Virus record (IMG/VR): IMGVR_UViG_3300032242_002041
Span: 164,287 to 228,286 of that record
DNA: 64,000 bases
Direction: 5' to 3' (one strand)
The position numbers and the translations under genes were made by a program. Every line of letters begins with the position of its first letter. Positions within the stretch are counted from its first letter, which is position 1. Of this stretch, positions 14,971 to 40,718 are shown one piece after another. Under the pieces are notes generated by a model. It saw only the letters and a program-made list of their open reading frames with translations. It ran no database searches and had not been told where the DNA came from.

Positions 14971-15432
14971 TTAAATTACAGTTGATTGTGTTGGACGAGT
15001 AAGATTATAACTAATGGAGCATCCGTTCTCGCCGTCTTCGGATACTTCAATTACTACAGCACGACCGGGATAGCGTTCGGCTATCTTTAAATATAAATCA
15101 TCGGCAATCATTTCACATGATTTCCAGTCTAGTTCTAAAACGGGATTCGAAACAATTCCGTTATTGGAATAGAGATTTTCAAGCCACCGTTTGAATTGGA
15201 TGAATTCGATATCTCTGTCGTTATGGAAGACATCGATTGACACCCGGAAATGAAAGATATGGCGATGAGGACTGGCCAAAAACGATACATCATATTCTCC
15301 TGCTGTGCATAATGCTGGGTCTGTTGCAGCCGCTGGATAGCGATGAATGCCTTCCTTACGGAATGTAACCCAAATTTGTCTCTGGGCTGCCGCTTTAATG
15401 CGTTCAATAGTTTCGCGTTCTTGTTGTATCAT
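14971..15432 (-). CDS. dpdL: QueD-like T-fold protein, probable CDG decarboxylase DpdL
   Basis: LASPHRHIF matches LxxxHRHxF; DRDIEFI, SCEMIA, VSEDGENG; second QueD paralogue in the cluster. Confidence 0.75.
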   Translation of the reverse strand: MIQQERETIERIKAAAQRQIWVTFRKEGIHRYPAAATDPALCTAGEYDVSFLASPHRHIFHFRVSIDVFHNDRDIEFIQFKRWLENLYSNNGIVSNPVLELDWKSCEMIADDLYLKIAERYPGRAVVIEVSEDGENGCSISYNLTRPTQSTVI

Positions 15433-16604
15433 TTCTGGTGGCTTTCTATATTAGTATTATTAAACGAGTCAATGGCATCATACATATCTGGAAAAATTGC
15501 ACGACTATTTAATTTTCTATCTTGGTCTAATTTGTTAAATTCTTCTACTGTATATTCAAGTCCGTCCCAATTGGATTTATAGGGAGTTCGATCGTCGTTT
15601 AACGAGGCAATTACGTTGTCAATGCCAAGAATATTTGAATAATCATTTTTAGAAATTCGCTGTCTAACCAACTCTCTCTGGTGATCAGTTAGTCGTTGAA
15701 TTGCCCACGGACCACCATTATCTCTCAGATTGTAGATATTAATAGTTATTGCTCGATGAGATATATTCAAAGTTTGATGCACCAAATCAATAAAATCCCA
15801 AATTGACAACGAGTTAATATTCATAAACACCATGTTAAAACTAAGGTGATGCTTTGCAATCAAGTTAATTGTGTGTAAATTTTCTAAGAAAACATTCCAT
15901 TTTCCGGGCCAACGAATATATTCATATTGTTCTGCAATTGATTCTCCGCTAACTAACCATTGTACATTACTAAACTGTTTCAACAATTCAAAAATTTTAT
16001 TTTCGTGTATTAGGCTAAGATTAGTATTAACACAAATACGACAAGATTTATTAACTTCTAATAATTTTCTTAAGACTATTTCGTTTTCTTTTATCATCAA
16101 CGGCTCGCCACCAGCAAGATATATTTCTTTAAGGTCGGCAGCAGATTCTAAAACATAATCTAACAAATCTCCTTTGGCTTCTTTCATCTTAACTACTTGA
16201 TATTTCTGTTCGGCCCATAGTGAGCTGAGCTCAGGGTCACAATATATGCAGGCAAAATTGCAGGTATTGTTCCAACGCAAATCAAGATATTTTAAATTAA
16301 AGTTATCAATATTGTTGTAAAACTCATCACCAAGATGGTTATATTTCTTTTTAAAATGATGTTGTAAAGTATGAGTACCAATCTGAGAGTGGCAATTTTT
16401 ACACCCTTCAACCGGAATATCATTTAACATCATTGTTTTGATATCGAGATTATTAGAGCCGCTTATTGTGTCTTTGATTGCAGGAGTTTTATTAATATTA
16501 CCTAATTTATTTTTACTCACACAACAATTTTCTATATTGCCTTGGGGGTCAATATACAGTGAAACCCACGGCGCTGGACAGAAATGTTTATTATCTATGG
16601 TCAT
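15429..16604 (-). CDS. radical SAM protein with N-terminal SPASM/twitch-like Cys domain
   Basis: FCPAPW..CC..GCKNC, then CNFACIYC, AGGEP. Confidence 0.85.
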   Translation of the reverse strand: MTIDNKHFCPAPWVSLYIDPQGNIENCCVSKNKLGNINKTPAIKDTISGSNNLDIKTMMLNDIPVEGCKNCHSQIGTHTLQHHFKKKYNHLGDEFYNNIDNFNLKYLDLRWNNTCNFACIYCDPELSSLWAEQKYQVVKMKEAKGDLLDYVLESAADLKEIYLAGGEPLMIKENEIVLRKLLEVNKSCRICVNTNLSLIHENKIFELLKQFSNVQWLVSGESIAEQYEYIRWPGKWNVFLENLHTINLIAKHHLSFNMVFMNINSLSIWDFIDLVHQTLNISHRAITINIYNLRDNGGPWAIQRLTDHQRELVRQRISKNDYSNILGIDNVIASLNDDRTPYKSNWDGLEYTVEEFNKLDQDRKLNSRAIFPDMYDAIDSFNNTNIESHQK

Positions 16605-16930
16605 TTTTGTAGCAATTCCATAGTTACAATTTTACCAATTGATTCAGATAAGTTTTCATCAGGGGTAACAATGTGTAGTTTAATCCGTTCTTCGTCTTTT
16701 TTGTGGTCATAATATTTGGTTTCAATTACTGTACCACCCGATACCTGTTGTACACGGAAGCGTATTGGATCCGGAAGTTCGAGACAATCTTTCGTCTCAA
16801 CGTCACAGTCATCAAAACTGACGCTAATACTTCCACGTCCAATCCTAGCAGGTTTACTTTTTTCTTCACTTAATTCGTAACTAAAATCCCAACCCCATGC
16901 AACTATCTTTGCCCATAACCATCTAATCAT
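16601..16930 (-). CDS. hypothetical protein
   Basis: Overlapping operon ORF. Confidence 0.65.
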   Translation of the reverse strand: MIRWLWAKIVAWGWDFSYELSEEKSKPARIGRGSISVSFDDCDVETKDCLELPDPIRFRVQQVSGGTVIETKYYDHKKDEERIKLHIVTPDENLSESIGKIVTMELLQK

Positions 16931-17442
16931 TTGATAACCTCGTCCTTTGTGTATTTAGACCAGTCAGTAAACACCTCACGTTTTTGTAAATCGTGTAACG
17001 AGTGGCACCAGACGCCTGGGTTTGTTGCTGCAAAATCTCGGTCATCAATTTTAAGAGTAGCATTGTATCCAAACTGTTTAATATAAGGAAGTTTAACGCT
17101 AATCATTGGAATGAAGTTATGGAATTCTACCAGTGCGGATTCAAGTAATCCTTCTGCCTGTTGAATATCTAAATCCAAAGTACATAACCAGCCAGCTTCC
17201 AAGCAGTCTTGTACCATGACTTCCCAATCACGCCATGCATCACCGTCATTTTTATCCAATGCTGGAAAACTCTGATTGGCACCAAAGTAGATATGTTCAA
17301 TGTTGTTATTCTTTGCTTCCTGTTGGACGATTTGTGAATCCTGTACACCTACTACAAATAGTGTACGGCGTCCAAACGCAGGGGTATGTTCTACTTCGGT
17401 TCCTGTAAAGAAACTTACTTCTTCGTGTCCTGCTCTAATCAT
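16927..17442 (-). CDS. conserved hypothetical protein of the deazaguanine cluster (paralogue within 26930..27655)
   Basis: GTEVEHTPAFGRRTLFV..HIYF..GVW..FTDWSKYTKD; likely start 17442. Confidence 0.7.
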   Translation of the reverse strand: MIRAGHEEVSFFTGTEVEHTPAFGRRTLFVVGVQDSQIVQQEAKNNNIEHIYFGANQSFPALDKNDGDAWRDWEVMVQDCLEAGWLCTLDLDIQQAEGLLESALVEFHNFIPMISVKLPYIKQFGYNATLKIDDRDFAATNPGVWCHSLHDLQKREVFTDWSKYTKDEVIK

Positions 17443-17641
17443 TTTGTTCTGTATTATAATGGGTGGATGGATTATTTTCTTGTTTAAGTATAACAATTTG
17501 TTTTTTTAATTGCAACCTTTGTTTCTTCAAATCAGTTAGTTCAACATCATCAAACACACCGGTGCTTTCCAAACCGTCAATTCTTTTGTTGAGTGCGTGG
17601 TGTGCTTCTTCTAAATGTTTAATTCTTCTTTCCCAAGACAT
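17435..17641 (-). CDS. small coiled-coil protein (YdcH/DUF465-like)
   Basis: HHALNKRI...LKKQRLQLKKQI pattern. Confidence 0.6.
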   Translation of the reverse strand: MSWERRIKHLEEAHHALNKRIDGLESTGVFDDVELTDLKKQRLQLKKQIVILKQENNPSTHYNTEQND

Positions 17642-19341
17642 TAGGCCTCCAGATTATCTAGTTTTGATTCATCTAAATCGGCATCATCTCCATCAATGCC
17701 ATCGTTTGATTCCTCTACTTCAAATAATGCATTAAATTGACTGTGTGCGTTTTTGGCTTTTTTACCTTTGAATCCGCGTGTGCCTACAATGTCCATCCAG
17801 TAACGATCATAAGACTCAATAATGGCTTCGGCTTCGGCACGATCAGGCGTAGCAAAGATGGCTTCTACAATGTCTTTAAATCGTGTATGATCTCCGTTTT
17901 GATCCCACATCATGGCGGGCCAAGATCCGTTGTCATATTCACGATTAGCTCTTTGTACAGCTTCTAGGTGCATCCAAACATTATGGCCCATTAGTAATGC
18001 ATAACTAAAACTATCCCACGATGTCTTGCCTTCTTTGCCAATCTTGTTCAACATACCAGGTTGATAGTAACAAACATCCTTCATTTGTAACTGTAGACTG
18101 ATTGGACTCTCGTCAAAGTGATCAACAAGACCATCGGCTACTACCGCTTGTCCATACGGACGAGTATCTGTTGAATACTTTTTATCGTCCGCAATTGGAC
18201 TCATTCGATAGCACCACTTTTCGTTGTGTGGAAGGTCGATGTGGTGGTAGACTTGCCCATTTGCTGTAGCCAAAAACGGCGAAGCACAATCAAAACTAAT
18301 AGTAAAAGAAGGATTAACATACTTACGAACTGCACGTTGAATGTCTGTAAGTAATACTGCCCACTCTAATTTACTTGTGCCCAAGAAGTGCATCCAATCA
18401 TGCACACCTTCTTTTAACAAGCCATCGTGGCGTAATGCTACAAGTCTACGCAGGACCAAATGCACATCGCACATGTTCTGACCACCCATTGACCAACCAT
18501 CAAAGTGTGTGTCTGGGTATATGGCAGGGTCACAATAGTGTTTCATTGTTTCATACCAACGATCTGCGTCAGCGTGATTGGCACCTTGTAAAACATTAAG
18601 AACTTTCATGCCACCATTCTTGGCGCCCTTGCGGTGCTTCATGTAATAGTCATTATTATATTTGGTAGCAGCCACAGCTTCTTCTAGTGTAGTAATGCCA
18701 CACTTGGCGCTGGCGTGTTTGTCATGTATGACCCAGGTTGGTATATCAAGTGTCATACCATAGTCGGCAACACCATCTAACCATTTGAGTACAGCTTCAC
18801 GTTTCTTCTGTGCAGCATCTAATAGATTTTGATAATTTTTAACATGATCAATCTTAATGTATTTGGTATTACCATTCTTATCGTGCTTGGGGGTACCATC
18901 GGGTTTAAGATCCGGCACATGCTCAACACCCTTGGCCCGGAGCTCGGCCATCTTGGCCAACACCACTGGACTTGTTGGGTCGCGCCACTCACCTTCCCAT
19001 AGACCTTTGGCAATTTGGAATCCACCTGAGTCGCCTAGCATTACAGTGCCAGGTTCACGATTACGAACCATATCCTCTGACCAGTCTTGTTTGGTTAGAT
19101 CCAAGTTGGCATGTCCACCCGAATACAAAGACCACTTATATGGAAATAAGCTCTTGGCGCTGTTAAGCCAGTTCATCATTTCCATATCTTTCATGCCAGC
19201 TGGCATACGAGTTTTTGGGTCTACATACGGTCCGTTTACTGGATCTCGTTGTTTACCTATGTAAGTGGCATAGAAACCACTAATAGCTGGCAAGAACACA
19301 GCATAATCGTTTTGTTTGGCTGTAAGATTATCTTGAGTCAT
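17641..19341 (-). CDS. dpdA: divergent tRNA-guanine transglycosylase-like protein (DpdA family, probably DpdA3-type)
   Basis: DSGGFQ, MTLDIP, VLQG, HFLGTS, SFDCASP TGT core motifs; in folE/queD/queE cluster. Confidence 0.8.
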   Translation of the reverse strand: MTQDNLTAKQNDYAVFLPAISGFYATYIGKQRDPVNGPYVDPKTRMPAGMKDMEMMNWLNSAKSLFPYKWSLYSGGHANLDLTKQDWSEDMVRNREPGTVMLGDSGGFQIAKGLWEGEWRDPTSPVVLAKMAELRAKGVEHVPDLKPDGTPKHDKNGNTKYIKIDHVKNYQNLLDAAQKKREAVLKWLDGVADYGMTLDIPTWVIHDKHASAKCGITTLEEAVAATKYNNDYYMKHRKGAKNGGMKVLNVLQGANHADADRWYETMKHYCDPAIYPDTHFDGWSMGGQNMCDVHLVLRRLVALRHDGLLKEGVHDWMHFLGTSKLEWAVLLTDIQRAVRKYVNPSFTISFDCASPFLATANGQVYHHIDLPHNEKWCYRMSPIADDKKYSTDTRPYGQAVVADGLVDHFDESPISLQLQMKDVCYYQPGMLNKIGKEGKTSWDSFSYALLMGHNVWMHLEAVQRANREYDNGSWPAMMWDQNGDHTRFKDIVEAIFATPDRAEAEAIIESYDRYWMDIVGTRGFKGKKAKNAHSQFNALFEVEESNDGIDGDDADLDESKLDNLEA

Positions 19342-19344
19342 CTA

Positions 19345-20067
19345 TTATTTAGACTGTGCTGGAATGATATAAGTGTAAGTAGCCAATCCAGAATCAACAG
19401 TAATCTGTGCTGCGCCATCGTCGCTGATCTTCATAACTTTATCGCCGGTTAAATCTAAAATACTAATAACTGTTTTAATTGGCCAACTCCAAGCACGTTT
19501 AAGAGTACCTGTTACACCTGGGTGGAACACAAAGTTACCTGCGTGTGTTGAATGGTCGCCGAAGAAGAATTTTAAATCGCCGTCTTCTGTTTTTGCTTGA
19601 AAGTTAACTTCTTCGGCATTGGCACTGGCCTGCATCTTCAATCGTTGAATAGCTGCTACAGTTGGTTCAAACTCAACGTGCCAAGGAACGCCTTTAAATT
19701 TAACTGTTTTGGCCTTTTGATCAACATGTTCGGCAGCCATAAAGCGATAATTATTTTTAAAGTCGCCGGTGGCATTTTTAAAATTAATACCATCTAGTGC
19801 CCCGGTATCTTTCTTTGTTACACCAAGTTCTGCACCTTCTTTATACTCTGGCAAGTTTAATAAAATATTAAGTTTAGCCAAATTTGGCATGCCAAACAAA
19901 CCAATAAACTCTGGCACCGGGTTGGTATATTTGCCTTCTACAATTACGCTACGATCTTCAGCAATACCAAATATTTCGGTTGCCTTGTCATCGCCTGTAA
20001 TTTTAACTAGGTCAATACAGCCTAATTTGTGTGTGTGTTCTACTAAGTCTAGTAAATGATCTTTCAT
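19345..20067 (-). CDS. DNA polymerase sliding clamp (gp45/PCNA-like)
   Basis: About 240 aa two-domain beta-rich protein ending YTYIIPA, near polB; SD AGGAGA before ATG 20067. Confidence 0.65.
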   Translation of the reverse strand: MKDHLLDLVEHTHKLGCIDLVKITGDDKATEIFGIAEDRSVIVEGKYTNPVPEFIGLFGMPNLAKLNILLNLPEYKEGAELGVTKKDTGALDGINFKNATGDFKNNYRFMAAEHVDQKAKTVKFKGVPWHVEFEPTVAAIQRLKMQASANAEEVNFQAKTEDGDLKFFFGDHSTHAGNFVFHPGVTGTLKRAWSWPIKTVISILDLTGDKVMKISDDGAAQITVDSGLATYTYIIPAQSK

Positions 20068-20098
20068 ATAATTCTCCTTGTTGTTGATTGTACGTGGT

Positions 20099-21058
20099 TT
20101 ATTTAGATTCTGCAACGGGTTTAGGTAATATTTGTGCCAAGGCCTGGCCACCACGGTATGATTGCCATTTTCCTGGTTTACGAAATTCTATCCAGGTCCA
20201 CGGCCCGTTGTCGTGATAGGTAAAGTGTTGTTCAAATCCTAAACTTTCAGCAAACGATAGAATCAGTGACCCCGGTGTGTACAGCCCTGTTGTTGCTTCA
20301 ACTGCTTTGACCCCTTCCCATCGATCACAGTCATTAAAGGTCATTAAGAGCATGCCCCCTGGGCGCATCTTTCTATAAAGTTCTATTAGGTATTGACGAA
20401 TTATTTCAAAAGGTCTATGGTTAAAATAATTCCAAGCAAGTACTAATCCAAATTGATTATTGGGCAATTGCCACAATATATCCTGATCTTGATCTTCTCG
20501 TATTGTGTAAGTTCGTAATCTACGTTGATATGCTTCATTGAACTGTGATAAAACTGGTTTTAACAGTTCATAATCTTCGTCAACAAGATATATAGGATCA
20601 TTGTTAACCATGTTGTGTATCCAAGATTCTACTCCAGGACGCAAAATCATAGTTGTATTTTGCCAACCAGAAACTCGCGTAATGCGATTTATGAGAAGTT
20701 CTCGAGTCTGGTCTGATACAGGCAAACGACTACTAAGAACATTATTAACATACTCGTTTGGGTCTCTCCATTTGTACCAACTATATCGATAAGAACGAAA
20801 TTCTTCATATGTTTTATAACTATTTTGTAGGTATGGCTGTTCTTCTTTTCTAATTTGATCGTATACTTGACGTTTAATAGTGTTGAATGCACTTTCAAAT
20901 TGATCAAATGAATTTAGTACATCGGAACGCAGATTTTCTAATTCTGAATGCTGAGATATTTGAATAATTTTTTGTAATTCTGCGTCAGCAAACCGTTTGG
21001 CATCTATTGCGGTTATAGAACACAGTTGATTGTAGTAGTTAACTAGATCGCTTAACAT
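20099..21058 (-). CDS. class I SAM methyltransferase-like protein
   Basis: FGLVLAWNYFNH...LYRKMRPGGMLL motif. Confidence 0.55.
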   Translation of the reverse strand: MLSDLVNYYNQLCSITAIDAKRFADAELQKIIQISQHSELENLRSDVLNSFDQFESAFNTIKRQVYDQIRKEEQPYLQNSYKTYEEFRSYRYSWYKWRDPNEYVNNVLSSRLPVSDQTRELLINRITRVSGWQNTTMILRPGVESWIHNMVNNDPIYLVDEDYELLKPVLSQFNEAYQRRLRTYTIREDQDQDILWQLPNNQFGLVLAWNYFNHRPFEIIRQYLIELYRKMRPGGMLLMTFNDCDRWEGVKAVEATTGLYTPGSLILSFAESLGFEQHFTYHDNGPWTWIEFRKPGKWQSYRGGQALAQILPKPVAESK

Positions 21059-21059
21059 A

Positions 21060-23717
21060 TTACCACTCAAATAAAGTTTGGAAGGTATTTTCGGTGTTAG
21101 TAGCTGCCGCTAGATCCCATTCCAACACACCTAACAAATTGTCTAATTTTTGATCTACCACTGTGGCTTCCATTTCGCTGTCATCAAATGGTAGTTCTTT
21201 AAACCACGTAGGAAGATGTGTTTCATCAGTAGGATAACCTATTGACGTCCAGCCCAGTGGGTTTGCTTTAAGTTTGCAAACAATAGTTTTCATGCCATCT
21301 ACAATTTGCATACTATACTTGTCACTGTTCATACGACGCAAATTGTTCCAGTTAAGTGCGGCACGGACATGTCCTGGCATGTTGGCTTTGCCTAGGCGTT
21401 CTTCTTCCTTGCCATATTTGGTCAAGTTGTTTACACGCTTAGGACTACCCTTTTCCCAACCTGGACGTTCTTTGAACTTGTACTTGAACTCGCGAATCTT
21501 TTCAATGATTTCTTCACGACTTGTGCCAATTAGTACCTCATCAAGAATTTGACTTAGGAATTCTTGAATAACCTTAGGAGTATCACTACGCTTGAGATCT
21601 AATCCCATGGCTTTTACTTTACCCGGTGATCCGTGTGTGTCTACACGCTTGTTTTCTTTGTCGTAGTACATGACAGCATACCGCTTTTTAGTAATAAACA
21701 AGCCTTTACTGGCAACAATCTCACGTCCACCTTTAATAACATCGCCCATCTCCCTAGGCACGTGAAATGCTTGTTCCATAAAACCTGGAAAGCTATCGTT
21801 AACTTGATCAGCAATACTGTTATACAGTCGAACGGCAATTTCACGACTCCAGGTCATGTTGCCTGCTTCTATTTCTTTTTGTAGTACAGGATACGCTGTA
21901 AAATAACACGAGTCTGTATCACCATATATAATTGCCTCGCCTACGTGATCATACACACCTGTGATACATTCGTTCACATACGCATCCATATGCCGGGCAA
22001 TTGCACGACCAGTAAGAGTTGTGGATTGACCAATACGCTTATCAAAGAAACGGCAACCAGGATTAAGAATAGCACCATAGAGACTGTTGAGGTTAATCTT
22101 TTTAACAAGTTGACGCTTGTCCCAGTATTCTTCATCTTCTGCATTTTTACACTCCTTTAATCGGGCCTGCATCTCTTTACGTTCAGCATACCAACGTTTT
22201 AACAATCCTGGAATAACAGCTTCCTTCTCATAGGTAAAGATAGTACCGTTAGCGGTAATCATCCAAGGATGATTGCTATCAAAAATTATCTTCCATATGT
22301 CAGCGGCACTGTGTACACTCTCCTCACCGTCTTTCCAGTCAATGGTAATTTCTGTACCTACTTCGGTATTCATGACTGCTTCGTATTCTAAACTTCCAAA
22401 CAGGCCTTCCCATGCCCCGGCAAATGAGCTACCTGCTCGCATCTTATCACCAATATAGCGTTCAGTCATTATAGGTCGGAGTTGTCCTACAATAGTTTCA
22501 GGTCCCATATTAAGTGCTCTAATAGCACTTGGATACAGTGAGTTAATATCTATACTACCTACATACTCGTGTATGCCTTTTTTTGGAAACGCAACATAGG
22601 CACCTGCGGCTTGTGTGTCTTCATCCGAATAGCGTTCCTTGCGATTAGGCACAACCATACCACGCTCGTGTGCTTCGTTAATAATTGCTTGTTCTGTTAC
22701 AGCTACAGCACCCATTGTAGTTTGTAGTAACACTGTGTTTTCGTGTGCTAGGGTATTGGCCAAATCCAAGAACTTTAATTTCTTATCCAGCTTGGCAAGA
22801 ATCATTGTGTCCTGACGGTTATATTCGATAAACTTTTTAAAGTTTTGATTGTACAATTGATCAAGTGTGCCTTCAAACACCGTCTTGGTTTCTTGTAACT
22901 CATATTCAGCAATAGCATCCAAACTATAACTATGGCGTTCTTCGTATGTGTACTTGCGATACAGTTGCATATAGTCCATATGCACACGACCAATTAAATC
23001 GTAGGTTTCGTTTTCTGCACCAAAGCGTTCGAACATACGTTTCTTAGGGTACTGGTTCCACAGGCAAAATCTGCGTGTATCATCCTTGCTGAGAATACGT
23101 GTAACACGATTTACTGTGTAGGGTATATCATAACCCTCTGAGTTCCAACCGGATAGTGCATCGGCGTCTTCGATAAGGTCCAAGAATGTTTTTAACATTT
23201 CATCTTCACGCTCAAAGACGACGCAGTTTTCAAACTCCTTGGCAATTTCGTTCGCAGTTGCACGACTCATATGCTTGGGCGGAACAACTAGCGTGACCAT
23301 TTGATCGAGCCATTGCAAGTAGACCGAGATTGCAGTGATAGCATTAAATGGATCTGTTGTTGGTGAGAAACCACGTTCGGGATCAAAGTCTACTTCAATG
23401 TCAAAGAATGCTACGTTTAACTTGGGACCATCTTGCCCTTTGTAGTTTTCTTCTAAGCACCGAAAGATTGGATTGATATCACTCTCATACAGTTGCTTGC
23501 CTGACTGTATGCGAATTTCTTTACGAAACTCTTTGTTGTTGCGTGTGCTGAATCTACTGACAGGTGTGCCGAATAGGCTTAGGAATTTACCACGAGGATC
23601 CTCGTAATAAAATACATAGTTGGCCGGATATTCTTGATAGGTTCTACGTCCATCCTTCCGTTCAACTACATGAATACGATCGTGTTCACGATCAAATAGT
23701 GCATCTACATAACTCAA
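21060..23717 (-). CDS. polB: family B DNA polymerase
   Basis: FFDIEV ExoI, WNSEGYD, DINSLYPS, KINLNSLYG, YGDTDS, KKRY; TTG start. Confidence 0.97.
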   Translation of the reverse strand: MSYVDALFDREHDRIHVVERKDGRRTYQEYPANYVFYYEDPRGKFLSLFGTPVSRFSTRNNKEFRKEIRIQSGKQLYESDINPIFRCLEENYKGQDGPKLNVAFFDIEVDFDPERGFSPTTDPFNAITAISVYLQWLDQMVTLVVPPKHMSRATANEIAKEFENCVVFEREDEMLKTFLDLIEDADALSGWNSEGYDIPYTVNRVTRILSKDDTRRFCLWNQYPKKRMFERFGAENETYDLIGRVHMDYMQLYRKYTYEERHSYSLDAIAEYELQETKTVFEGTLDQLYNQNFKKFIEYNRQDTMILAKLDKKLKFLDLANTLAHENTVLLQTTMGAVAVTEQAIINEAHERGMVVPNRKERYSDEDTQAAGAYVAFPKKGIHEYVGSIDINSLYPSAIRALNMGPETIVGQLRPIMTERYIGDKMRAGSSFAGAWEGLFGSLEYEAVMNTEVGTEITIDWKDGEESVHSAADIWKIIFDSNHPWMITANGTIFTYEKEAVIPGLLKRWYAERKEMQARLKECKNAEDEEYWDKRQLVKKINLNSLYGAILNPGCRFFDKRIGQSTTLTGRAIARHMDAYVNECITGVYDHVGEAIIYGDTDSCYFTAYPVLQKEIEAGNMTWSREIAVRLYNSIADQVNDSFPGFMEQAFHVPREMGDVIKGGREIVASKGLFITKKRYAVMYYDKENKRVDTHGSPGKVKAMGLDLKRSDTPKVIQEFLSQILDEVLIGTSREEIIEKIREFKYKFKERPGWEKGSPKRVNNLTKYGKEEERLGKANMPGHVRAALNWNNLRRMNSDKYSMQIVDGMKTIVCKLKANPLGWTSIGYPTDETHLPTWFKELPFDDSEMEATVVDQKLDNLLGVLEWDLAAATNTENTFQTLFEW

Positions 23718-23788
23718 ATTTTTCTCCGTTTATGGCCGGTTAGCCATGATTCATGCTCCTTATGGGAGCGACTCAGTAAATATTTATA
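23718..23788 (-). promoter_or_regulatory. polB TATAAATA promoter and two-hairpin leader (putative translational operator)
   Basis: TATAAATA 23781-23788; GCUCC/GGAGC and AUGGC/GCCAU stems; loop CCG complementary to CGG at the SD. Confidence 0.55.
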
Positions 23789-23801
23789 TACACAACTCGA
23801 C

Positions 23802-24875
23802 TCAGTTAAAATTTCCTTCAAACCATGTGTCCGGAAGTAACTTTGCCTGGTTAATTAAATCTAATGCTATAATTTTTTCTGGATGTAAATTATTAAAAAC
23901 ATCGTGAGTTTTAAATTCATGTTTATCCCAGGTATTCCAATTGGTCAGTCGAGAGTATTCAACTCGATCAACATTGTATAGCTTGCACAGACTGTAAAAT
24001 TCAAGAATTTCTCGAAAGTTAGATTGTTGCACAATCATTCGAGTATTAAACTTGAATCCTACTGCCTCTTTTTTATTTTTTAAAAATTCCAAAGACCTTA
24101 AAATGTCTGGCCACTGGCCACCGCGTCTAATTTTTTCATATGTATCGGGTCTAGCTGCATCAACTGATATAGTTACATTACTAATTGCTGATTCTATGTG
24201 TTTGACTCTATGCCAATTTTTTTCAGCCAATAAGCCATTACTGTGTAAACTTATTGCTATGTTTGGAAAGTCTTTTAAATTTAATAGTCCCAAAAAACTT
24301 TGTATCATAGGACTAGAAAAAACTTCTCCAGCGCCACTGGTTACTAAGTGTATACGTTGACTAGATGGTTTTGAAAAAATATTTTGAAAGATACGTTGAC
24401 TAATTTCTTCTTGTCTAGCTATATCTTCCTCACTGATTTTGGTTACCTTTGTTCTACAACTAGGACAACTAAGATTGCAGGTAGAATCAACATTTAACGC
24501 AATTTCGTAAGGCATGTCATGTAGACTGGCATCTTCGATTTGCCGAGCTACATTTAACGGAAGAGTGTCCGCGGTGTTTAAATTGCCATTGATTATTAAT
24601 GCACATTGATTCTCGTCGCAATAATCATAAGTGCCATCTATAATGCTTTGTCTGATGCGTTGTGCTTTTGGAGACGACAGCATCTGTTCCAGTGTTTCGG
24701 TTAAAATATTTCCAATTCTGGTATCGCCCCAACCGGGACAGGGGCAAAGATGAACTTCGCCTATGACACTGATGTGTATGTTTATAAACGGACTAAGACA
24801 AAAGTAACCTTTAAGATTCTTAGGAGGAAACTTTTTCTTATCTATAAACACCACCGGAACAGCTACAGAGTTCAA
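23802..24875 (-). CDS. radical SAM protein with N-terminal SPASM/twitch-like domain
   Basis: FCLSPF..CPC..YCDENQC, CNLSCPSC, GAGEVF. Confidence 0.85.
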   Translation of the reverse strand: MNSVAVPVVFIDKKKFPPKNLKGYFCLSPFINIHISVIGEVHLCPCPGWGDTRIGNILTETLEQMLSSPKAQRIRQSIIDGTYDYCDENQCALIINGNLNTADTLPLNVARQIEDASLHDMPYEIALNVDSTCNLSCPSCRTKVTKISEEDIARQEEISQRIFQNIFSKPSSQRIHLVTSGAGEVFSSPMIQSFLGLLNLKDFPNIAISLHSNGLLAEKNWHRVKHIESAISNVTISVDAARPDTYEKIRRGGQWPDILRSLEFLKNKKEAVGFKFNTRMIVQQSNFREILEFYSLCKLYNVDRVEYSRLTNWNTWDKHEFKTHDVFNNLHPEKIIALDLINQAKLLPDTWFEGNFN

Positions 24876-25135
24876 AGAGTCTTGCCTACTGTAACTAAAA
24901 TTTGTTCAAGTAATTCGTGATCCTGTTGCTCACGACCAAACTCACTCTTGTGTGCCAGCTTGATAGCCTTCTTGAGAATGTTGGGTTTGATGTCTAATTC
25001 TTCGGCAATGGCTTTGATAGTATCGTTAAGTCCACCTGTGAGTGTTTCGATCTCCAAGGTCACCTGCATACCTTCGTTAATAACCTGGGTCAATTTGGCC
25101 TGTTCGGCTGTGTTAAAAGTTCTGTTGTTAGACAT
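24872..25135 (-). CDS. small dsDNA-binding protein (T4 DsbA/GapR-like)
   Basis: Helical IETL..LNDTIKAIAEELDIKPNILKKAIKLAHK pattern; sigma70-like promoter at 25157-25184. Confidence 0.55.
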   Translation of the reverse strand: MSNNRTFNTAEQAKLTQVINEGMQVTLEIETLTGGLNDTIKAIAEELDIKPNILKKAIKLAHKSEFGREQQDHELLEQILVTVGKTL

Positions 25136-25210
25136 GTAAATCTCCTTTGTTCTGCTATTATATACGATTATTTTAAAAAGTCAAGCCTGGATTGGCTAAA
25201 CTTAAATGCG

Positions 25211-26110
25211 TCAACCTAATATTATTAGATTAACAGACACAAAGTCTTCTCGCCACCTACAAAATATTCTATCTAGTTGGTCCTGGTCTCGATTAACAAT
25301 ATTACCCAATGGATAATCTCCCCAAAGGTCTTGATAAGTAACCGCATTTTGATCCATCCATTTGCGAAACAATGGACCTTGATAGATCTCTTGTCTATAA
25401 GTTCCGTTTACTAATTTGCAACCGCCCCAACTCATGTGATGACCGGTTGTGTCCCAATGGTTAGGATCATCATTGTCGATAAAACTTTGCATGGTTGTTT
25501 TGCCATGCACAGCTTGATCCAAAATTAAATCAGCGTGTTCCCAGCTGTGGTATTGACGATGAGGAGCTAGATCAACATAACCAATTTTAAATCCGTGTCT
25601 ATCTAACTTAGGCTGAAAATTAAACTCCAATCCAGCTGTGCTTAATTCTTTTTTTGGATACTCATGAATAGTGGATTCTAAAACATGCACTACCTGATTT
25701 AATTCGTTCAACCAGTAATACTCAGCAGATAGTTCTAAATTATCAGTTGTTATTCCTTGAATATAATCATCAAACCAACTAGGATTGTTAGTTATTATCC
25801 GTTGAGAATGCTCAGTAAACCATCTATGCCATACATTAAGATGGTGTTGTGTAATCTCTTCCGGTGTACTAACCGGTAACGGTATAGGTAAAGAAGTCTT
25901 GGACAATTCTTGTTGCACTAATTGTTGATGAACCCACTGTGATTGATTTGCAACTAATAAGTTTGTTGCTATTCCTTGCTTTATTACACTTCTAGACTGG
26001 GGAAGTTTTTTGCAATATTCACCCCAGGCGCAAACTCCCGGATTATCTATTAAATCAATTAATAAACTTTCGGTGCTAGATCTAAATTTGATATCAATTT
26101 TTAGTTGCAT
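25211..26110 (-). CDS. hypothetical protein
   Basis: 299-aa AT-rich ORF. Confidence 0.7.
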   Translation of the reverse strand: MQLKIDIKFRSSTESLLIDLIDNPGVCAWGEYCKKLPQSRSVIKQGIATNLLVANQSQWVHQQLVQQELSKTSLPIPLPVSTPEEITQHHLNVWHRWFTEHSQRIITNNPSWFDDYIQGITTDNLELSAEYYWLNELNQVVHVLESTIHEYPKKELSTAGLEFNFQPKLDRHGFKIGYVDLAPHRQYHSWEHADLILDQAVHGKTTMQSFIDNDDPNHWDTTGHHMSWGGCKLVNGTYRQEIYQGPLFRKWMDQNAVTYQDLWGDYPLGNIVNRDQDQLDRIFCRWREDFVSVNLIILG

Positions 26111-26114
26111 ATTA

Positions 26115-26229
26115 ACCTGTAGCTCACTTTAAGTTACCATTCCGGGGCACGACTCCCATAATAACTAACCCAGCAGCCGGGCACACCCAAAGTAACGGTA
26201 ACGTCCTAAGGTAGGTGTTTTATACAGGT
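26115..26229 (-). ncRNA. candidate structured non-coding RNA
   Basis: GC-rich intergenic segment closed by ACCUGUA/UACAGGU with internal stems ACACC/GGUGU, GCCCGG/CUGGGU, AGUUAUU/GGUAACU, GGG/CCC. Confidence 0.45.
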
Positions 26230-26300
26230 GCATAGGGATTACGTTTGTAATCGCTATTATCACCTTCTTGTTGTTCTGGATAAATTGGATAATCGTTCAT
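26220..26300 (-). CDS. 26-aa micro-ORF
   Basis: MNDYPIYPEQQEGDNSDYKRNPYAPV; starts 5 nt after the upstream stop. Confidence 0.5.
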   Translation of the reverse strand: MNDYPIYPEQQEGDNSDYKRNPYAPV

Positions 26301-26304
26301 ATGT

Positions 26305-26943
26305 CTACTTACCGTCGACATGGAGCTGGCTACCATTATTGAAGCTGGGGCTAAATGGACTTTGTGCTACACGCCCGCCTTTGGATTGTGACCATGCATA
26401 GCCGGCACGATGTCCTGAACAGTCTTTGGTGCAAGGGCTACCAAGGAAGCTGAGTTCGTTTAATTCATCTTTGAGCCAGGTATCAGCAAAGGCTTTGCAC
26501 AATGCTTGAATTTTTTTATTTCGAGTAATTTCTAAATGATATGTTTTATTACCGGCTTTGGTTTGTTGACTAGGATCTCTATAGCCAGCATAGACTTTAT
26601 GTACCGGTGTACTACTGATCAAATCTCGACAGCTAGAACCCGCACGTTCAGGCATGGGTTCGGTGCAAGGACTACAGGTAGTCAGGATGATACTGCCATT
26701 GGGTATGTCGCCAAAACGGTCATGATACGCATCAATAGCCGCTCGTTCAGCGTGAACATCACCTGATTCGATCCAGTAGTTCAGTGCTGCCACACAGTTG
26801 TTGTTACGATCCAGCACCGCGGCTGCACACATCATGTAAGCATCGGGATCTCGACGCTGTCCGTCAATTACCAACTCACAAAGACGTACCAGGATTTCAT
26901 CTAGTTGCTTTCTATCATGTATTTGAAAATCACTTATGCGCAT
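26305..26943 (-). CDS. zinc-dependent deaminase-like protein plus C-terminal Cys peptide
   Basis: HAE...SPC..C deaminase motifs; MRISDF leader; LNE boundary before PCTKDCSGHRAGY. Confidence 0.75.
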   Translation of the reverse strand: MRISDFQIHDRKQLDEILVRLCELVIDGQRRDPDAYMMCAAAVLDRNNNCVAALNYWIESGDVHAERAAIDAYHDRFGDIPNGSIILTTCSPCTEPMPERAGSSCRDLISSTPVHKVYAGYRDPSQQTKAGNKTYHLEITRNKKIQALCKAFADTWLKDELNELSFLGSPCTKDCSGHRAGYAWSQSKGGRVAQSPFSPSFNNGSQLHVDGK

Positions 26944-27655
26944 CTTTAATCCAGTCGTCGGGAACTACACCGTGTTTTTCAACAAACAGCTCGTGCAGTT
27001 TTTTTGGAGTAATTTTGTATTTTTTGGCTATAGACTTCATCATGTGATCTATAGCATCGTAGCTGTAGGGATGGCGAAGATCTTTTTCAAGATCATCAAC
27101 ACTGCCTTCTTTTAATGGAATAACCTTGACATCTTTATCATACCGTTTCCAAGGTGTAAAGTTTTTGTTAGTTCTAATCGTATCAAAGTCAGCAACATAT
27201 ACACCGCCTGACTTGTTCCAGTCAGCACCGCCAACAAATTTCATGGACACACGGTCTCCTAACTTGTGCATGTCAGGGATTTGTATAGCCACATTCATAA
27301 CAAAGTTTTTATTGTTAGTTAAATCAGCATAACGGCTAGCTAGTTCGTTAGGAATATCAATAGTAACTGTATAGTTTTGTCGTAAGAAGTGCTGGGCCAA
27401 TTGCCTATATCTCTTTAATACCTGCGCCTGATTACTACTGTGATTTAACGCATAGGTAACTTCTAAATAAATGTGACGGCATTTGAATTGTTCGGCTATA
27501 GATTGAATGGTGTCAATGTCTTTGAACTGGTTGACAATCAAAGTTTTTTTGCCGTAGGCAGCAGTCCTCTCAACTTCAGGACCGATGATATAATCGGGTC
27601 TATTGCCGGTTGGATGCACATTTTTTGTGCTGGTAGTAAAGTCACTGGCTCTCAT
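26930..27655 (-). CDS. putative virion internal protein carrying a paralogue of 16927..17442
   Basis: MRASDF leader; GPEVERTAAYGKKTLIV..HIYL..GVY..FTPWKRYDKD; LKE boundary. Confidence 0.7.
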   Translation of the reverse strand: MRASDFTTSTKNVHPTGNRPDYIIGPEVERTAAYGKKTLIVNQFKDIDTIQSIAEQFKCRHIYLEVTYALNHSSNQAQVLKRYRQLAQHFLRQNYTVTIDIPNELASRYADLTNNKNFVMNVAIQIPDMHKLGDRVSMKFVGGADWNKSGGVYVADFDTIRTNKNFTPWKRYDKDVKVIPLKEGSVDDLEKDLRHPYSYDAIDHMMKSIAKKYKITPKKLHELFVEKHGVVPDDWIKDAHK

Positions 27656-31963: not shown

Positions 31964-32404
31964 TCATGCCCTTGCTTCTTTTAAACTAGAACGTAATTGC
32001 CAAGCAAACTTATTGGTTTGACTTAAACGTTCAGCAATAAAATTTGCTATGTCTTGTTTGTTTTCTTTGGTGGCAGCTGCAAAACATTGGTTTAATAACC
32101 CAACCATCTCTTCGCTATTGGCCAACAATTCTTCAATCATTAATCGGGCACGGGGCACTTTGAGTTGCCCGGGGATTACGCTTAGTTCTAGGAAACGTTC
32201 CATACTACCTGGGGAATATTCTTGTAGACTGCGAATGTATTCGGCTGTGGGATCTATGGCACTATAGGCATCTTCATAGATCTTTTGGAAAAACTTATGA
32301 TATTGATAAAAGTCTGGCGATTCAATATTCCAGTGGAAAGCATGTGCTTTTACATAATAGGCAAATTGAGTTCCTAACAAGGTTTTTAACAAATCAGCTA
32401 ACAT
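31964..32404 (-). CDS. dps: Dps/ferritin-like DNA starvation protection protein
   Basis: HAFHWNI..PDFYQYH..F..IYE, D..AEYIR, K.AWQL. Confidence 0.88.
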   Translation of the reverse strand: MLADLLKTLLGTQFAYYVKAHAFHWNIESPDFYQYHKFFQKIYEDAYSAIDPTAEYIRSLQEYSPGSMERFLELSVIPGQLKVPRARLMIEELLANSEEMVGLLNQCFAAATKENKQDIANFIAERLSQTNKFAWQLRSSLKEARA

Positions 32405-32894: not shown

Positions 32895-32919
32895 AGTGTA
32901 TTTAGCGTAATTTAAACTG

Positions 32920-40652: not shown

Positions 40653-40669
40653 GATAGTATTTACCGGGC

Positions 40670-40696
40670 AAACAAAAGCCGCTTTGATAGCGGCTT
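40670..40696 (-). terminator. rho-independent terminator
   Basis: AAGCCGCT/AGCGGCTT stem followed by a U-rich tract on the minus strand. Confidence 0.7.
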
Positions 40697-40718
40697 GTGT
40701 CATTTAAACAAAAACAGT

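What the first reader, a model, noticed from the sequence alone, without database searches (positions are those of the whole stretch)
16927..27655. Unknown dpd-cluster protein has a second copy fused to a capsid-targeting leader
Seen: 16927..17442 (GTEVEHTPAFGRRTLFV..HIYF..TLDL..MISVKLP..GVW..FTDWSKYTKD) aligns by eye over its full length with residues ~25-180 of 26930..27655 (GPEVERTAAYGKKTLIV..HIYL..TIDIP..MNVAIQIP..GVY..FTPWKRYDKD). The second copy has an MRASDF leader and ends at an LKE site. Inference: an uncharacterised factor linked to modified DNA (reader, protector or pathway enzyme) exists as a cytoplasmic copy near dpdA and as a packaged, injected copy.
Basis: partly seen in the sequence, partly recalled or inferred. 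Interest (0 to 1): 0.8.

Follow-up and report, generated by a model that had tools for sequence, protein, structure and literature searches.

The report
Deazaguanine-cluster protein with capsid-targeted paralogue
A jumbo phage carries two diverged copies of an uncharacterised protein: one sits beside its DNA-modification (7-deazaguanine) enzymes, and the other has the same kind of N-terminal tag that phage T4 uses to load proteins into its head, so it is probably packaged and injected with the DNA, though no experiment shows this yet.

Summary
ORF A (16927-17442, 171 aa) and ORF B (26930-27655, 241 aa) are paralogues: 23% identity over 158 aa, E=2e-14. They belong to a large family with no Pfam or PHROG match. 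The AlphaFold model is confident (pLDDT 93.7) but matches no solved fold.

A-type members lie next to a divergent TGT/DpdA-like protein, and near DpdL, FolE and QueD or QueC, in every independent context examined.

B-type is a rare monophyletic clade. Every member, and no A-type member, starts with M(R/K)xx(E/D)F. Six other genes in the 26.3-36.2 kb block share this leader. It resembles the T4 capsid-targeting sequences of IPI, IPII/III and gp24, read here from the T4 record.

B does not end at LKE. LKE is the junction to a 58-aa module that also occurs on many unrelated enzymes. Four unrelated module types are preceded by [LIV]xE, the T4-protease type of site, in 32 of 34 cases. A related 354,680-bp contig encodes both a B-type copy and an S77 prohead protease.

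Packaging, cleavage, injection and any link to modified DNA remain inferred. B has lost several A-type conserved polar residues, and its own leader has no canonical cleavage site.

Verdict: partly supported; new variant of a known kind.

The parts
16927..17442 (-). A: the 171-aa A-type member of a new alpha/beta family, with no leader
   Evidence: ORF. More than 6800 homologues and 685 representatives. AF2 pLDDT 93.7. No significant fold match in PDB, and only the ACP17 homologue in BFVD.
26930..27655 (-). B: the 241-aa B-type paralogue, made of leader, core, LKE junction and C-terminal module
   Evidence: B-type is monophyletic (support 0.96).
27593..27655 (-). B residues 1-21: leader starting MRASDF (MRAKEF in close relatives), resembling the T4 IPI leader
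   Evidence: T4 leaders read from NC_000866. The leader is found only in the B clade and its sister.
27122..27592 (-). B residues 22-178: core domain homologous to A
   Evidence: The A-type motifs GANxS, KIDD and TNPGVW are replaced.
27107..27115 (-). LKE, residues 181-183: junction with a putative Glu-specific cleavage site
   Evidence: 16 of 18 proteins carrying this module have [LI]xE at this position.
26933..27106 (-). B residues 184-241: portable 58-aa helical module (DLEKDL...PDDWIK)
   Evidence: The module is found on ImmA-like peptidase, ParB, HD, cytidylyltransferase and other proteins. It matches phrog_10346 and T4-like cyanophage proteins.
17641..19341 (-). 566-aa DpdA-like protein (divergent TGT superfamily), just upstream of A
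   Evidence: DSGGFQ motif. hhalign to the ACP17/KVP40-type DpdA profile gives probability 87.8%, E=3.3e-6. That profile against E. coli Tgt gives E=8.3e-5. The protein is upstream of A in all about 80 related loci. There is no Pfam hit and no TGT hit in Foldseek.
19345..20070 (-). gp45/PCNA-like sliding clamp, directly upstream of the DpdA-like gene
   Evidence: Atlas scores 0.94-0.99 to sliding-clamp clusters; TM 0.74-0.76 to PCNA/gp45 models. The gene order is conserved.
14971..15432 (-). DpdL (QueD-like protein, proposed CDG decarboxylase)
   Evidence: Carries the LxxxHRHxF signature defined in PMC10516641. tblastn hits ACP17 at 53% identity and phiST at E=1e-9.
15429..16604 (-). Radical SAM/SPASM protein between DpdL and A
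   Evidence: Pfam and PHROG hits, including a weak QueE-like match.
11111..11917 (-). FolE (GTP cyclohydrolase I)
   Evidence: Pfam E=8e-39.
7249..7764 (-). QueD (PTPS family)
   Evidence: Pfam E=7e-15.
26305..26943 (-). Leader-bearing cytidine/dCMP deaminase (starts MRISDF) with a C-terminal LSFLGS...CTKDCSGH module after LNE
32404..36249 (-). Rest of the leader array: 69 aa (MRLHEF), 70 aa (MRFYEI), GNAT 277 aa (MRLREF), 159 aa (MRAEEF) and DUF6321 359 aa (MKAYEFITE), with some genes lacking the leader interspersed
36246..40703 (-). 1485-aa multidomain protein with an NTase-like N-terminal domain and a C-terminal NFADG basic module after LQE; it has no leader

Best explanation
A and B are diverged paralogues of a previously undescribed alpha/beta protein family. 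The family accompanies a divergent TGT-like DNA transglycosylase (DpdA-like) in DpdL-type 7-deazaguanine clusters of T4-superfamily phages. A is the ordinary intracellular copy. It is encoded in the order polB, sliding clamp, DpdA-like, A, and it most likely works with the transglycosylase at or near the replisome, either as an accessory subunit or as an auxiliary enzyme. B belongs to a rare, old subclade that acquired a T4-type capsid-targeting leader, M(R/K)xx(E/D)F. B sits in an array of leader-bearing small enzymes: a deaminase, a GNAT and a DUF6321 protein in the window, and ParB, HD and ImmA-like peptidase proteins in relatives. Short portable modules on these proteins are separated by [LIV]xE junctions. 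The proposed mechanism is as follows. The leader recruits B to the prohead core. The S77 (gp21-type) prohead protease cuts after Glu at LKE(183), which frees the 58-aa C-terminal module. The core domain stays in the head and enters the cell with the DNA. Because B has lost part of the A-type conserved polar cluster, it more likely acts as a binding or shielding factor for the incoming modified genome, or as a decoy, than as the same enzyme. Shown here: the homology, the synteny, the distribution of the leader, the junction motif, and an S77 protease on a genome that carries a B-type gene. Inferred: targeting, cleavage, injection and all biochemical function.
For: Paralogy: (E=2e-14). Association with the deazaguanine cluster: ACP17 has the order FolE, A homologue, DpdA, then DpdL and QueE nearby. 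L083, L087, L089 and L091 share only 38-46% identity with A, yet each has the 515-542-aa DpdA-like gene beside the family member, plus DpdL, FolE, PTPS or QueC. About 80 closer loci all have the DpdA-like gene just upstream. Among cultured phages the family occurs only in phages that also have DpdL, namely the PA5oct-like group and ACP17. The DpdA-like identity rests on the DSGGFQ motif and on hhalign results. Cui et al. [quoted passage not shown] Leader: 7 of 78 genes carry it, against 0.19 expected (P about 1e-9), and all lie in one 12-gene block. 5 of those 7 have [LI]xE within residues 4-20, against 12 of 71 other genes (Fisher 0.0046). T4 IPI starts MKTFKEFTST..ITE, IPII/III start MKTYQEFIAE and gp24 starts MAKINELLRE, all read from NC_000866. 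17 of 283 family members have the leader, and all 17 are in the B clade or its sister pair P0178 (MKLSEFITE) and P0183 (MKLSEFVSE), even though overall identity drops to about 34%. Junctions are [LIV]xE in 16 of 18, 9 of 9, 4 of 4 and 3 of 3 cases for four unrelated modules. In the T4-superfamily loci fetched around S77 proteases, small ORFs between portal and protease start with the same leader; Atu_ph07 gp199, MKLTELFNPLTE, sits just after the portal gene, at the T4 gp67 position. Contig IMGVR_UViG_3300032236_000747 encodes both the B-type protein P0133 and a T4-like head module with an S77 protease. Atu_ph07 gp204 matches Peptidase_S77 at E=1.4e-21. Group 2 jumbo phages have the gp20 portal and an S77 protease (PMC7824862).
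Against: There are no proteomic or expression data. The window has no head genes, and the protease could not be retrieved from the window's own contig. B's own leader has no [LI]xE site before the core domain, so the leader may not be removed. The leader pattern was defined after looking at the data, so the P value is optimistic. The R or K at position 2 is partly forced by ATGA start/stop overlaps. The T4 late-promoter motif TATAAATA is not enriched and is absent upstream of the array. In L088 the B-type gene stands alone between phoH and the clamp loader, not in an array. The family is absent near DpdA in BUCT-ZZ01, pf16 and KVP40, and tblastn did not find it in Phosso, so it is not a universal DpdA partner. 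The DpdA-like protein gets no Pfam TGT hit, and its Foldseek hits are only generic TIM barrels. In PA5oct the A homologue lies about 27 kb from the DpdA-like and DpdL genes.
Confidence: 0.55

Rival explanations
1. The shared N-terminus is not a targeting signal. It is a by-product of cassette shuffling and translational coupling: the ATGA overlap, together with a conserved first few codons, provides a recombination or re-initiation site. Under this view B and its neighbours are ordinary cytoplasmic early proteins, and the [LIV]xE junctions are simply linker sequence inherited along with the modules.
For: Most array genes start inside the stop codon of the previous gene (ATGA), which forces an A-initial second codon, giving R or K. 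The modules are clearly mobile between proteins. No late promoter was found. The array lies next to replication genes, not head genes.
Against: The ATGA overlap does not explain the conserved acidic residue followed by Phe/Ile/Leu at positions 5-6. It also does not explain retention of the leader in a clade that has diverged to about 34% identity, or in L088, where the gene stands alone with no upstream overlap. The same leader occurs on positional equivalents of prohead core proteins next to S77 proteases and on experimentally established T4 CTS proteins. Four unrelated modules share the same three-residue motif just upstream of them.
Confidence: 0.2
2. The family has no real connection to deazaguanine. 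It is a replisome accessory, for example a clamp-associated factor, and it lies near the DpdA-like gene only because both sit in a conserved replication module inherited by related jumbo phages.
For: The order polB, clamp, DpdA-like, A is conserved. Most loci come from one broad phage lineage. In PA5oct the A homologue is 27 kb away from the DpdA-like and DpdL genes. Some A-type members have long tails ending in a conserved basic peptide, which suggests contact with DNA or the clamp.
Against: In ACP17, a 156-kb phage with a different DpdA type, the homologue sits between FolE and DpdA and not next to a clamp. In L089 it overlaps the end of QueC. Among 50,697 cultured phage records it occurs only in phages that also carry DpdL, although T4-like replisomes are present in thousands of records.
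Confidence: 0.15
3. B is packaged but has nothing to do with modified DNA. It is a degenerate duplicate that was co-opted as one more generic internal or ejected effector or DNA-condensing protein. Like the neighbouring deaminase, GNAT, ParB and peptidase cargos, it would target a host function unrelated to 7-deazaguanine.
For: B-type has replaced the A-type motifs GANxS, KIDD, N141 and W145. B-type is rare and sporadic: 26 proteins against more than 6800 A-type. It is fused to GNAT in some relatives. The cargo repertoire mirrors that of the injected polyvalent proteins.
Against: B keeps about 20 other conserved positions, including E16, E18, H50, D90 and K131, so the fold and part of the pocket persist. 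All known B-type genes are in the phage lineage that also has A, the DpdA-like gene and DpdL. Neither point is decisive.
Confidence: 0.25

Closest known systems
T4 internal proteins IPI, IPII and IPIII, plus Alt and gp24, with their capsid-targeting sequence (Mullaney and Black 1996; reviewed in PMC3012670 and PMC5694885)
   Same: Both have a short N-terminal leader of the form M-(K/R)-x-x-(x)-E-F/L. Most have an (I/L)-x-E site, and cleavage by the prohead protease follows the Glu. The cargos are diverse and fast-evolving behind a conserved leader. The genes lie outside the head gene cluster. IPI* protects modified DNA from a modification-dependent nuclease.
   Different: The leader here is one residue shorter than in IPII/III. 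The cargos are recognisable enzymes rather than small basic proteins. The proteins also carry C-terminal portable modules set off by [LIV]xE. B's own leader has no cleavage site. Nothing has been tested experimentally.
Virion and non-virion RNA polymerase paralogue sets of phiKZ-like jumbo phages (PMC7824862)
   Same: One function is present as two diverged paralogous copies, one packaged in the virion and one made after infection.
   Different: The family, the phage group and the targeting mechanism are all different: those proteins use long propeptides and A/S/G-x-E sites. The packaged RNA polymerase keeps its catalytic residues, whereas B has lost part of the conserved cluster.
Polyvalent proteins injected with phage DNA (Iyer et al. 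2017, cited in PMC7824862)
   Same: The effector domain repertoire overlaps: Zn-peptidase, ParB, GNAT, nucleotidyltransferase, HD and deaminase domains are all predicted to enter the host with the DNA.
   Different: Polyvalent proteins are single giant multidomain polypeptides. Here most cargos are separate small proteins, each with its own leader. Only the 1485-aa ORF resembles a polyvalent protein.
DpdB, the ATPase partner required by bacterial DpdA (PMC10164549)
   Same: It is a non-TGT protein encoded beside a DNA transglycosylase and is needed for base exchange, which is the role proposed here for A.
   Different: There is no sequence or fold relationship. A has no ATPase motifs, and its role is only inferred from synteny.
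The DpdL/DpdA3 7-deazaguanine pathway of phiST and ACP17 (Cui et al. 2023, PMC10516641)
   Same: The window has FolE, QueD, a DpdL with the LxxxHRHxF signature and a distant TGT homologue. ACP17 carries an A-family member next to its DpdA.
   Different: The 515-566-aa transglycosylase here is a separate, very divergent subgroup. The A family was not noted in that study, and phiST lacks it.

Membership tests
T4-type CTS-bearing packaged (internal) proteins | N-terminal leader of 10-20 residues resembling the known CTS | tested here: met
   B starts MRASDFTTST, and relatives start MRAKEFTTST. T4 IPI starts MKTFKEFTST, IPII/III start MKTYQEFIAE and gp24 starts MAKINELLRE. The leader is shared by 7 of 78 genes in the window.
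T4-type CTS-bearing packaged (internal) proteins | (L/I)-x-E protease site at the end of the leader | tested here: not met
   B has no [LI]xE in its first 30 residues. The site is present in 5 of the 7 array members and in the sister proteins P0178 (ITE) and P0183 (VSE). B's only junction site is LKE at residues 181-183.
T4-type CTS-bearing packaged (internal) proteins | The phage encodes an S77 (gp21-type) prohead protease and a T4-like head module | tested here: inconclusive
   Neither is in the window, and neither could be retrieved from its contig. Both are present on the 354,680-bp contig that encodes the B-type protein P0133 and in the relative Atu_ph07 (Pfam S77, E=1.4e-21).
T4-type CTS-bearing packaged (internal) proteins | The protein is physically present in the virion and is processed | not testable with these tools
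   There is no cultured host, and no proteome for a phage carrying a B-type gene was available.
T4-type CTS-bearing packaged (internal) proteins | Late expression | tested here: inconclusive
   TATAAATA occurs 3 times against 4.9 expected, and never upstream of the array. The late promoters of this lineage are unknown.
TGT/DpdA superfamily (the 566-aa neighbour of A) | Catalytic DSGGFQ-type motif and the conserved QG, GG, LGxG and FDC motifs | tested here: met
   DSGGFQ is invariant in 26 homologues. The motifs align with E. coli Tgt and with phage DpdA in hhalign.
TGT/DpdA superfamily (the 566-aa neighbour of A) | Significant match to the TGT profile or fold | tested here: inconclusive
   There is no Pfam hit at E<0.01 and no PDB sequence hit. 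Foldseek returns only generic TIM barrels at E>=0.009. hhalign gives probability 87.8%, E=3.3e-6 to the ACP17/KVP40 DpdA profile.
DpdL (proposed CDG decarboxylase) | QueD-like T-fold in which CxxxHGH is replaced by LxxxHRHxF | tested here: met
   The 153-aa ORF contains LASPHRHIF. The signature is defined in PMC10516641. Homology to ACP17 is 53% identity and to phiST DpdL E=1e-9.
Any described protein family, for the A/B core | Match to Pfam, PHROGs, PDB or BFVD | tested here: not met
   The core gets no Pfam or PHROG family. The best PDB Foldseek hit has E=0.06 and TM<=0.39. In BFVD only the ACP17 homologue matches. The Atlas lead to GH-type TIM barrels scored 0.77, below its usable threshold.
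Polyvalent injected proteins | A single very large polypeptide joining many effector domains | tested here: not met
   B is 241 aa with one core domain and one small module. Only its 413-aa relatives add a GNAT domain.

The most novel reading that the evidence does not exclude
The A family is the missing partner that DpdA3-like/DpdL systems need in order to replace guanine by 7-deazaguanine across a whole genome. This would explain why DpdL plus DpdA alone failed in E. coli. Its leader-bearing paralogue B would be an injected, IPI*-like guardian: it recognises the 7-deazaguanine base or DNA and blocks a modification-dependent host nuclease the moment the genome enters the cell. More broadly, these freshwater jumbo phages would load a whole set of small enzymes into the capsid through a T4-type leader and trim them at [LIV]xE junctions.
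Probability: 0.15. Interest if true: 0.85.

Novelty: new variant of a known kind. Interest (0 to 1): 0.6.

Why it matters
If the reading is right, three things follow.

1. It names a concrete, abundant and unannotated candidate (more than 6800 sequences) for the unexplained requirement of the DpdL/DpdA 7-deazaguanine pathway. That pathway has so far failed to work when reconstituted.

2. It shows that the T4 capsid-targeting principle extends to uncultured freshwater jumbo phages. There it would serve as a general way of delivering enzymes (deaminase, acetyltransferase, ParB, peptidase, HD hydrolase), with a recognisable leader and junction grammar that could be used to predict injected proteins from sequence alone.

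3. It gives a case where a DNA-modification accessory protein has a packaged paralogue. That is the arrangement expected for a factor protecting modified DNA at the moment of entry.

Tried and rejected
- Pfam and PHROG scans of A and of the B core gave nothing.
- Foldseek of the confident A model against PDB and BFVD gave no significant match except the ACP17 homologue. I therefore rejected readings as an STAS domain, an SbcD capping domain or a TIM half-barrel.
- The ESM Atlas pointed to glycoside-hydrolase TIM-barrel fragments at score 0.77. That is below its own usable level, so I did not adopt it.
- Megablast of the region against phage records found no match.
- Pfam scans of the longer family members found no informative fused domain. 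The extensions are low-complexity tails.
- Sequence and profile searches of the DpdA-like protein against PDB, and Foldseek of its model, did not return TGT. Its identity rests on motifs and hhalign only.
- The T4 late-promoter motif is not enriched.
- Supplements of the Cui 2023 and PA5oct papers were not available, so I could not check the DpdA subfamily assignment of ACP17 or the virion status of the PA5oct homologue.
- Three scans for the prohead protease did not return the window's own contig.
- The 1161-aa ORF has no homologue in cultured phages.
- I considered a signal-peptide or secretion reading of the leader and rejected it, because the leader has no hydrophobic stretch.

Full report
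**1. The observation**

All genes in this part of the window are on the minus strand.
- ORF A is 16927-17442 (171 aa from an ATG that overlaps the stop of the upstream 68-aa ORF).
- ORF B is 26930-27655 (241 aa).
- BLASTP aligns A with B residues 22-175 at 23% identity and 45% positives over 158 aa, E=2e-14.
- The similarity is therefore real and covers the whole of A.
- B starts MRASDF. LKE is at residues 181-183, but B continues for another 58 residues.

**2. The genome**

The window is part of IMG/VR contig IMGVR_UViG_3300032242_002041, 228 kb. It has no close DNA relative among cultured phages. Its family-B DNA polymerase is closest to those of the following:
- Sinorhizobium phage Phosso (50% identity)
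- Agrobacterium phage Atu_ph07 (46%)
- Vibrio phage 2.275.O
- the Rak2/GAP32/CBB group of T4-superfamily jumbo phages

**3. The family**

A has more than 6800 homologues in the 90%-clustered metagenomic protein database. It has 685 representatives at 50% clustering. Some are on contigs of 350-375 kb. No Pfam or PHROG family matches it.

An AlphaFold2 model built from 40 diverse members is confident: pLDDT 93.7, pTM 0.88. It shows an alpha/beta fold with eight strands. Structure searches gave the following:
- Foldseek finds nothing significant in the PDB (best E=0.06, TM<=0.39).
- In BFVD only the homologue from Acidovorax phage ACP17 matches.
- The ESM Atlas lead to glycosidase-type TIM-barrel fragments scored 0.77, below its usable range.

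Conserved polar residues sit at the C-terminal ends of the strands: E16, E18, H50, N56, S58, D90, K131, D133, D134 and N141. This pattern fits a ligand-binding or catalytic pocket, but no function can be read from the fold.

**4. Genomic context of A-type members**

The window itself holds these genes:

| Gene | Coordinates |
|---|---|
| QueD | 7249-7764 |
| FolE | 11111-11917 |
| DpdL | 14971-15432 |
| radical-SAM/SPASM protein | 15429-16604 |
| A | 16927-17442 |
| DpdA-like protein (566 aa) | 17641-19341 |
| gp45/PCNA-like sliding clamp | 19345-20070 |
| DNA polymerase | 21060-23717 |

DpdL is a QueD-like protein with the LxxxHRHxF signature that Cui et al. defined. It is 53% identical to the ACP17 protein, and it hits phiST DpdL at E=1e-9.

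The 566-aa protein has an invariant DSGGFQ motif. Its assignment to the TGT superfamily rests on these results:
- No Pfam hit at E<0.01.
- hhalign to a profile of the ACP17/BUCT-ZZ01/pf16/KVP40 DpdA proteins gives 87.8% probability, E=3.3e-6.
- That profile matches E. coli Tgt at E=8.3e-5 across the DSGGFQ, QG, GG and LGVG motifs.
- The AF2 model (pLDDT 84.7) gives only generic TIM-barrel hits.

I therefore call the protein DpdA-like, probable but not proven.

Four divergent family members (38-46% identity to A) were traced to their contigs. Each lies beside a 515-542-aa homologue of the DpdA-like protein. Each also has DpdL, FolE, PTPS or QueC within a few kb. About 80 closer loci all have the DpdA-like gene just upstream of A.

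In ACP17, which has a different DpdA type, the homologue lies between FolE and DpdA, with DpdL and QueE nearby.

Among 50,697 cultured phage records the family occurs only in the PA5oct-like phages and in ACP17. All of these also carry DpdL. The family is not universal, however:
- A family HMM finds nothing near DpdA in BUCT-ZZ01, pf16 or KVP40.
- tblastn did not find it in Phosso.
- In PA5oct it lies about 27 kb from the DpdA-like and DpdL genes.

Cui et al. could not obtain dDG from DpdL plus DpdA of ACP17 or phiST in E. coli. [quoted passage not shown] The A family is an obvious candidate, at least for ACP17.

**5. B-type is a distinct clade with a leader**

A search with B returned only 26 proteins, of which about 16 are B-type; the rest share only its C-terminal module. 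They come in three architectures:
- 181-188 aa: leader plus core, ending where LKE lies in B.
- 241 aa: as in the window.
- 413 aa: with an added GNAT domain and a Cys-rich LSFLGS...CTKDCSGH module.

In a tree of 119 members, B-type is monophyletic (support 0.96), and its sister is the pair P0178/P0183. All 17 members of this combined clade start with M(R/K)xx(E/D)F. Examples are MRAKEF, MKAIEF, MKLSEFITE and MKLSEFVSE. None of the roughly 266 A-type sequences in hand does. The leader is kept although the rest of the protein has diverged to about 34% identity. That argues for selection on the leader.

B-type keeps about 20 conserved positions but replaces the following:
- the GANxS loop (G54E, N56T, S58A)
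- the KIDD motif (D133V, D134G)
- N141
- W145

B is therefore not a simple second copy of the same activity.

**6. The leader in the window and its resemblance to the T4 CTS**

Seven of 78 predicted genes start M[RK]xx[DE][FIL]. All seven lie within genes 30-41 of the gene order, at 26305-36249:
- deaminase (MRISDF)
- B (MRASDF)
- 69 aa (MRLHEF)
- 70 aa (MRFYEI)
- GNAT (MRLREF)
- 159 aa (MRAEEF)
- DUF6321 protein (MKAYEFITE)

From amino-acid composition 0.19 such genes are expected, giving a binomial P of about 1e-9. The pattern was chosen after seeing the data, so this figure is optimistic.

Five of the seven have [LI]xE within residues 4-20, against 12 of 71 other genes (Fisher P=0.0046).

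Most of these genes start inside the previous stop codon (ATGA). This partly forces R or K at position 2, but it does not explain the acidic-Phe pair.

I read the T4 leaders from the T4 record rather than from memory:
- IPI: MKTFKEFTSTTTPVSTITE, followed by A
- IPII and IPIII: MKTYQEFIAE, followed by A
- gp24: MAKINELLRE, followed by S

The literature establishes four points:
- These 10-20-residue propeptides target proteins to the prohead core.
- gp21 removes them by cutting after Glu.
- Foreign proteins fused to them are encapsidated.
- The cargos behind the leader are highly diverse anti-restriction proteins.

The window's leaders are clearly of this type. The leader of B relatives, MRAKEFTTST, is closest to that of IPI.

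**7. Modules and junctions**

The last 58 residues of B (DLEKDL...PDDWIK) recur on unrelated proteins:
- ImmA-like Zn-peptidases
- a ParB-domain protein
- an HD-domain protein
- a cytidylyltransferase
- several proteins of unknown function

Almost all of these also begin with the leader. The module also occurs in T4-like cyanophage proteins such as S-CRM01 g34. The neighbouring gene there, g33, starts MRTFESFLAE.

Three further portable modules were seen:
- NFADG followed by a basic tail. This is also the C-terminus of the window's 1485-aa ORF.
- LSFLGS...CTKDCSGH. This is the C-terminus of the window's deaminase.
- WSxKYK.

The three residues just before each module are [LIV]xE in 16 of 18, 9 of 9, 4 of 4 and 3 of 3 cases respectively. 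Four unrelated modules share the same upstream tripeptide, whatever domain precedes them. This is what processing sites of a Glu-specific prohead protease would look like. Many of these sequences are related to one another, so the counts are not independent events.

**8. Head genes**

The window contains no head module.
- In Atu_ph07, gp204 is a Peptidase_S77 protein (E=1.4e-21).
- The small ORF right after the Atu_ph07 portal gene, in the position of T4 gp67, starts MKLTELFNPLTE.
- In 124 loci fetched around S77 proteases, leader-type starts are common on small gp67-like ORFs between portal and protease. In two loci (L104, L106) they also occur on the ORF just after the protease.
- Contig IMGVR_UViG_3300032236_000747 (354,680 bp) encodes the B-type protein P0133. 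It also encodes a T4-like head module: portal, gp67-like ORF, S77 protease, putative scaffold protein and putative MCP (assigned by position).
- In its relatives, an ORF a few kb upstream of the portal gene starts MRINELIxE, much like T4 gp24.

So a genome with a B-type gene does have the required protease. The window's own contig could not be retrieved in three scans. [quoted passage not shown]

**9. Interpretation**

A is most likely an intracellular companion of the DpdA-like transglycosylase. It is encoded in the replisome block right after the sliding clamp. Some relatives carry long acidic tails that end in a conserved basic peptide.

B is most likely a capsid-targeted paralogue. The proposed sequence of events is:
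- the leader recruits B to the prohead core;
- the protease cuts at LKE183 and releases the 58-aa module;
- the core domain is delivered with the DNA.

What B does there is unknown. Because it has lost part of the conserved pocket, a binding or shielding role seems more likely than catalysis. This would be analogous to T4 IPI*, which protects modified DNA from a modification-dependent nuclease. All steps after the sequence patterns are inference.

The weak points are these:
- B's leader has no canonical cleavage site.
- No proteomic or expression data exist.
- No late promoter was found.
- In L088 the B-type gene stands alone, not in an array.

**10. Comparison with known systems and novelty**

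- The targeting principle is that of the T4 internal proteins.
- Packaged and non-packaged paralogue pairs are known for jumbo-phage RNA polymerases.
- The cargo repertoire matches that of the injected polyvalent proteins.

To my knowledge and in the papers searched, three things are new:
- the A/B family itself, and its link to DpdL/DpdA-like clusters;
- a leader-bearing paralogue of such a modification-cluster protein;
- the grammar of leader, enzyme, [LIV]xE and portable module in uncultured T4-superfamily jumbo phages.

I rate it a new variant of a known kind, with interest 0.6.

Noticed in passing
window 19345-20070 (-): A gp45/PCNA-like sliding clamp lies directly upstream of the DpdA-like gene. 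The order polB, clamp, DpdA-like, A is conserved in four divergent loci (L083, L087, L089, L091). This suggests that DNA modification is coupled to the replisome.
   Followed up: partly
window 2630-3142 (-); L091 11591-12106; L099 2748-3209: A phosphoribosyltransferase (annotated XGPRT in BUCT-ZZ01) recurs inside 7-deazaguanine clusters. It may recycle the guanine released by base exchange back into GTP for FolE.
   Followed up: no
window 3876-6381 and 11998-13538 (-): dTDP-sugar pathway genes (two or three NAD epimerase/dehydratases, an RmlC-like epimerase and a short DegT-like fragment of 197 aa) are interleaved with FolE, QueD and DpdL. This hints at a further, sugar-based modification.
   Followed up: no
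window 15429-16604 and 23802-24875 (-): Two paralogous radical-SAM proteins have the SPASM domain N-terminal to the radical-SAM core, which is an unusual order. No canonical QueE was seen in the window.
   Followed up: no
proteins P0169, P0173, P0197, P0277, P0279 and others: Some A-type members carry tails of 80-180 residues, acidic or Pro-rich, with a conserved GLD..KS.LKPE motif. Most of the tails end in a conserved AAEAYAEG..DPLG..SKKPKAKK peptide. These may be DNA- or clamp-binding tails.
   Followed up: partly
window 31964-32404 (-): A Dps/ferritin-like protein (Pfam Ferritin, E=7e-19) sits inside the leader-gene array but has no leader itself.
   Followed up: no
window 36246-40703 (-): A 1485-aa ORF has an N-terminal nucleotidyltransferase-like domain (homologues in Maribacter phages and cyanophages). 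After LQE it has the same C-terminal NFADG basic module found on small leader-bearing proteins. It resembles a polyvalent protein.
   Followed up: partly
L093 (Synechococcus phage S-CRM01) 2683-3342 and 3365-4915: g33 starts MRTFESFLAE, almost the T4 CTS, and is Lys/Pro-rich. g34 lies between the small and large terminase genes and contains the DLEKDL...WIK-type module, a CW..NCV motif and a DUF6321-like basic C-terminus.
   Followed up: partly
window 26305-36249 (-): Most genes of the array begin inside the stop codon of the preceding gene (ATGA). This implies translational coupling and partly explains the R or K at position 2 of the leader.
   Followed up: yes
window 16601-16930 and 17435-17641 (-); L088 5236-5607: A is flanked by two small conserved ORFs, a 68-aa coiled-coil protein and a 109-aa protein. 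The 109-aa protein has a homologue about 1 kb from the B-type gene in L088.
   Followed up: partly
window 44154-47298 (-): A ClpA/ClpB-like AAA+ protein (758 aa) and a DnaJ homologue are encoded next to each other, as in Atu_ph07 and other Rak2-like phages.
   Followed up: no
L221 10995-11198 (contig IMGVR_UViG_3300032236_001613): A 67-aa ORF about 2.4 kb downstream of the S77 protease consists only of a leader (MRINELIFE) and the CTKDCSGH..GY.W module. The same module ends the window's deaminase.
   Followed up: partly
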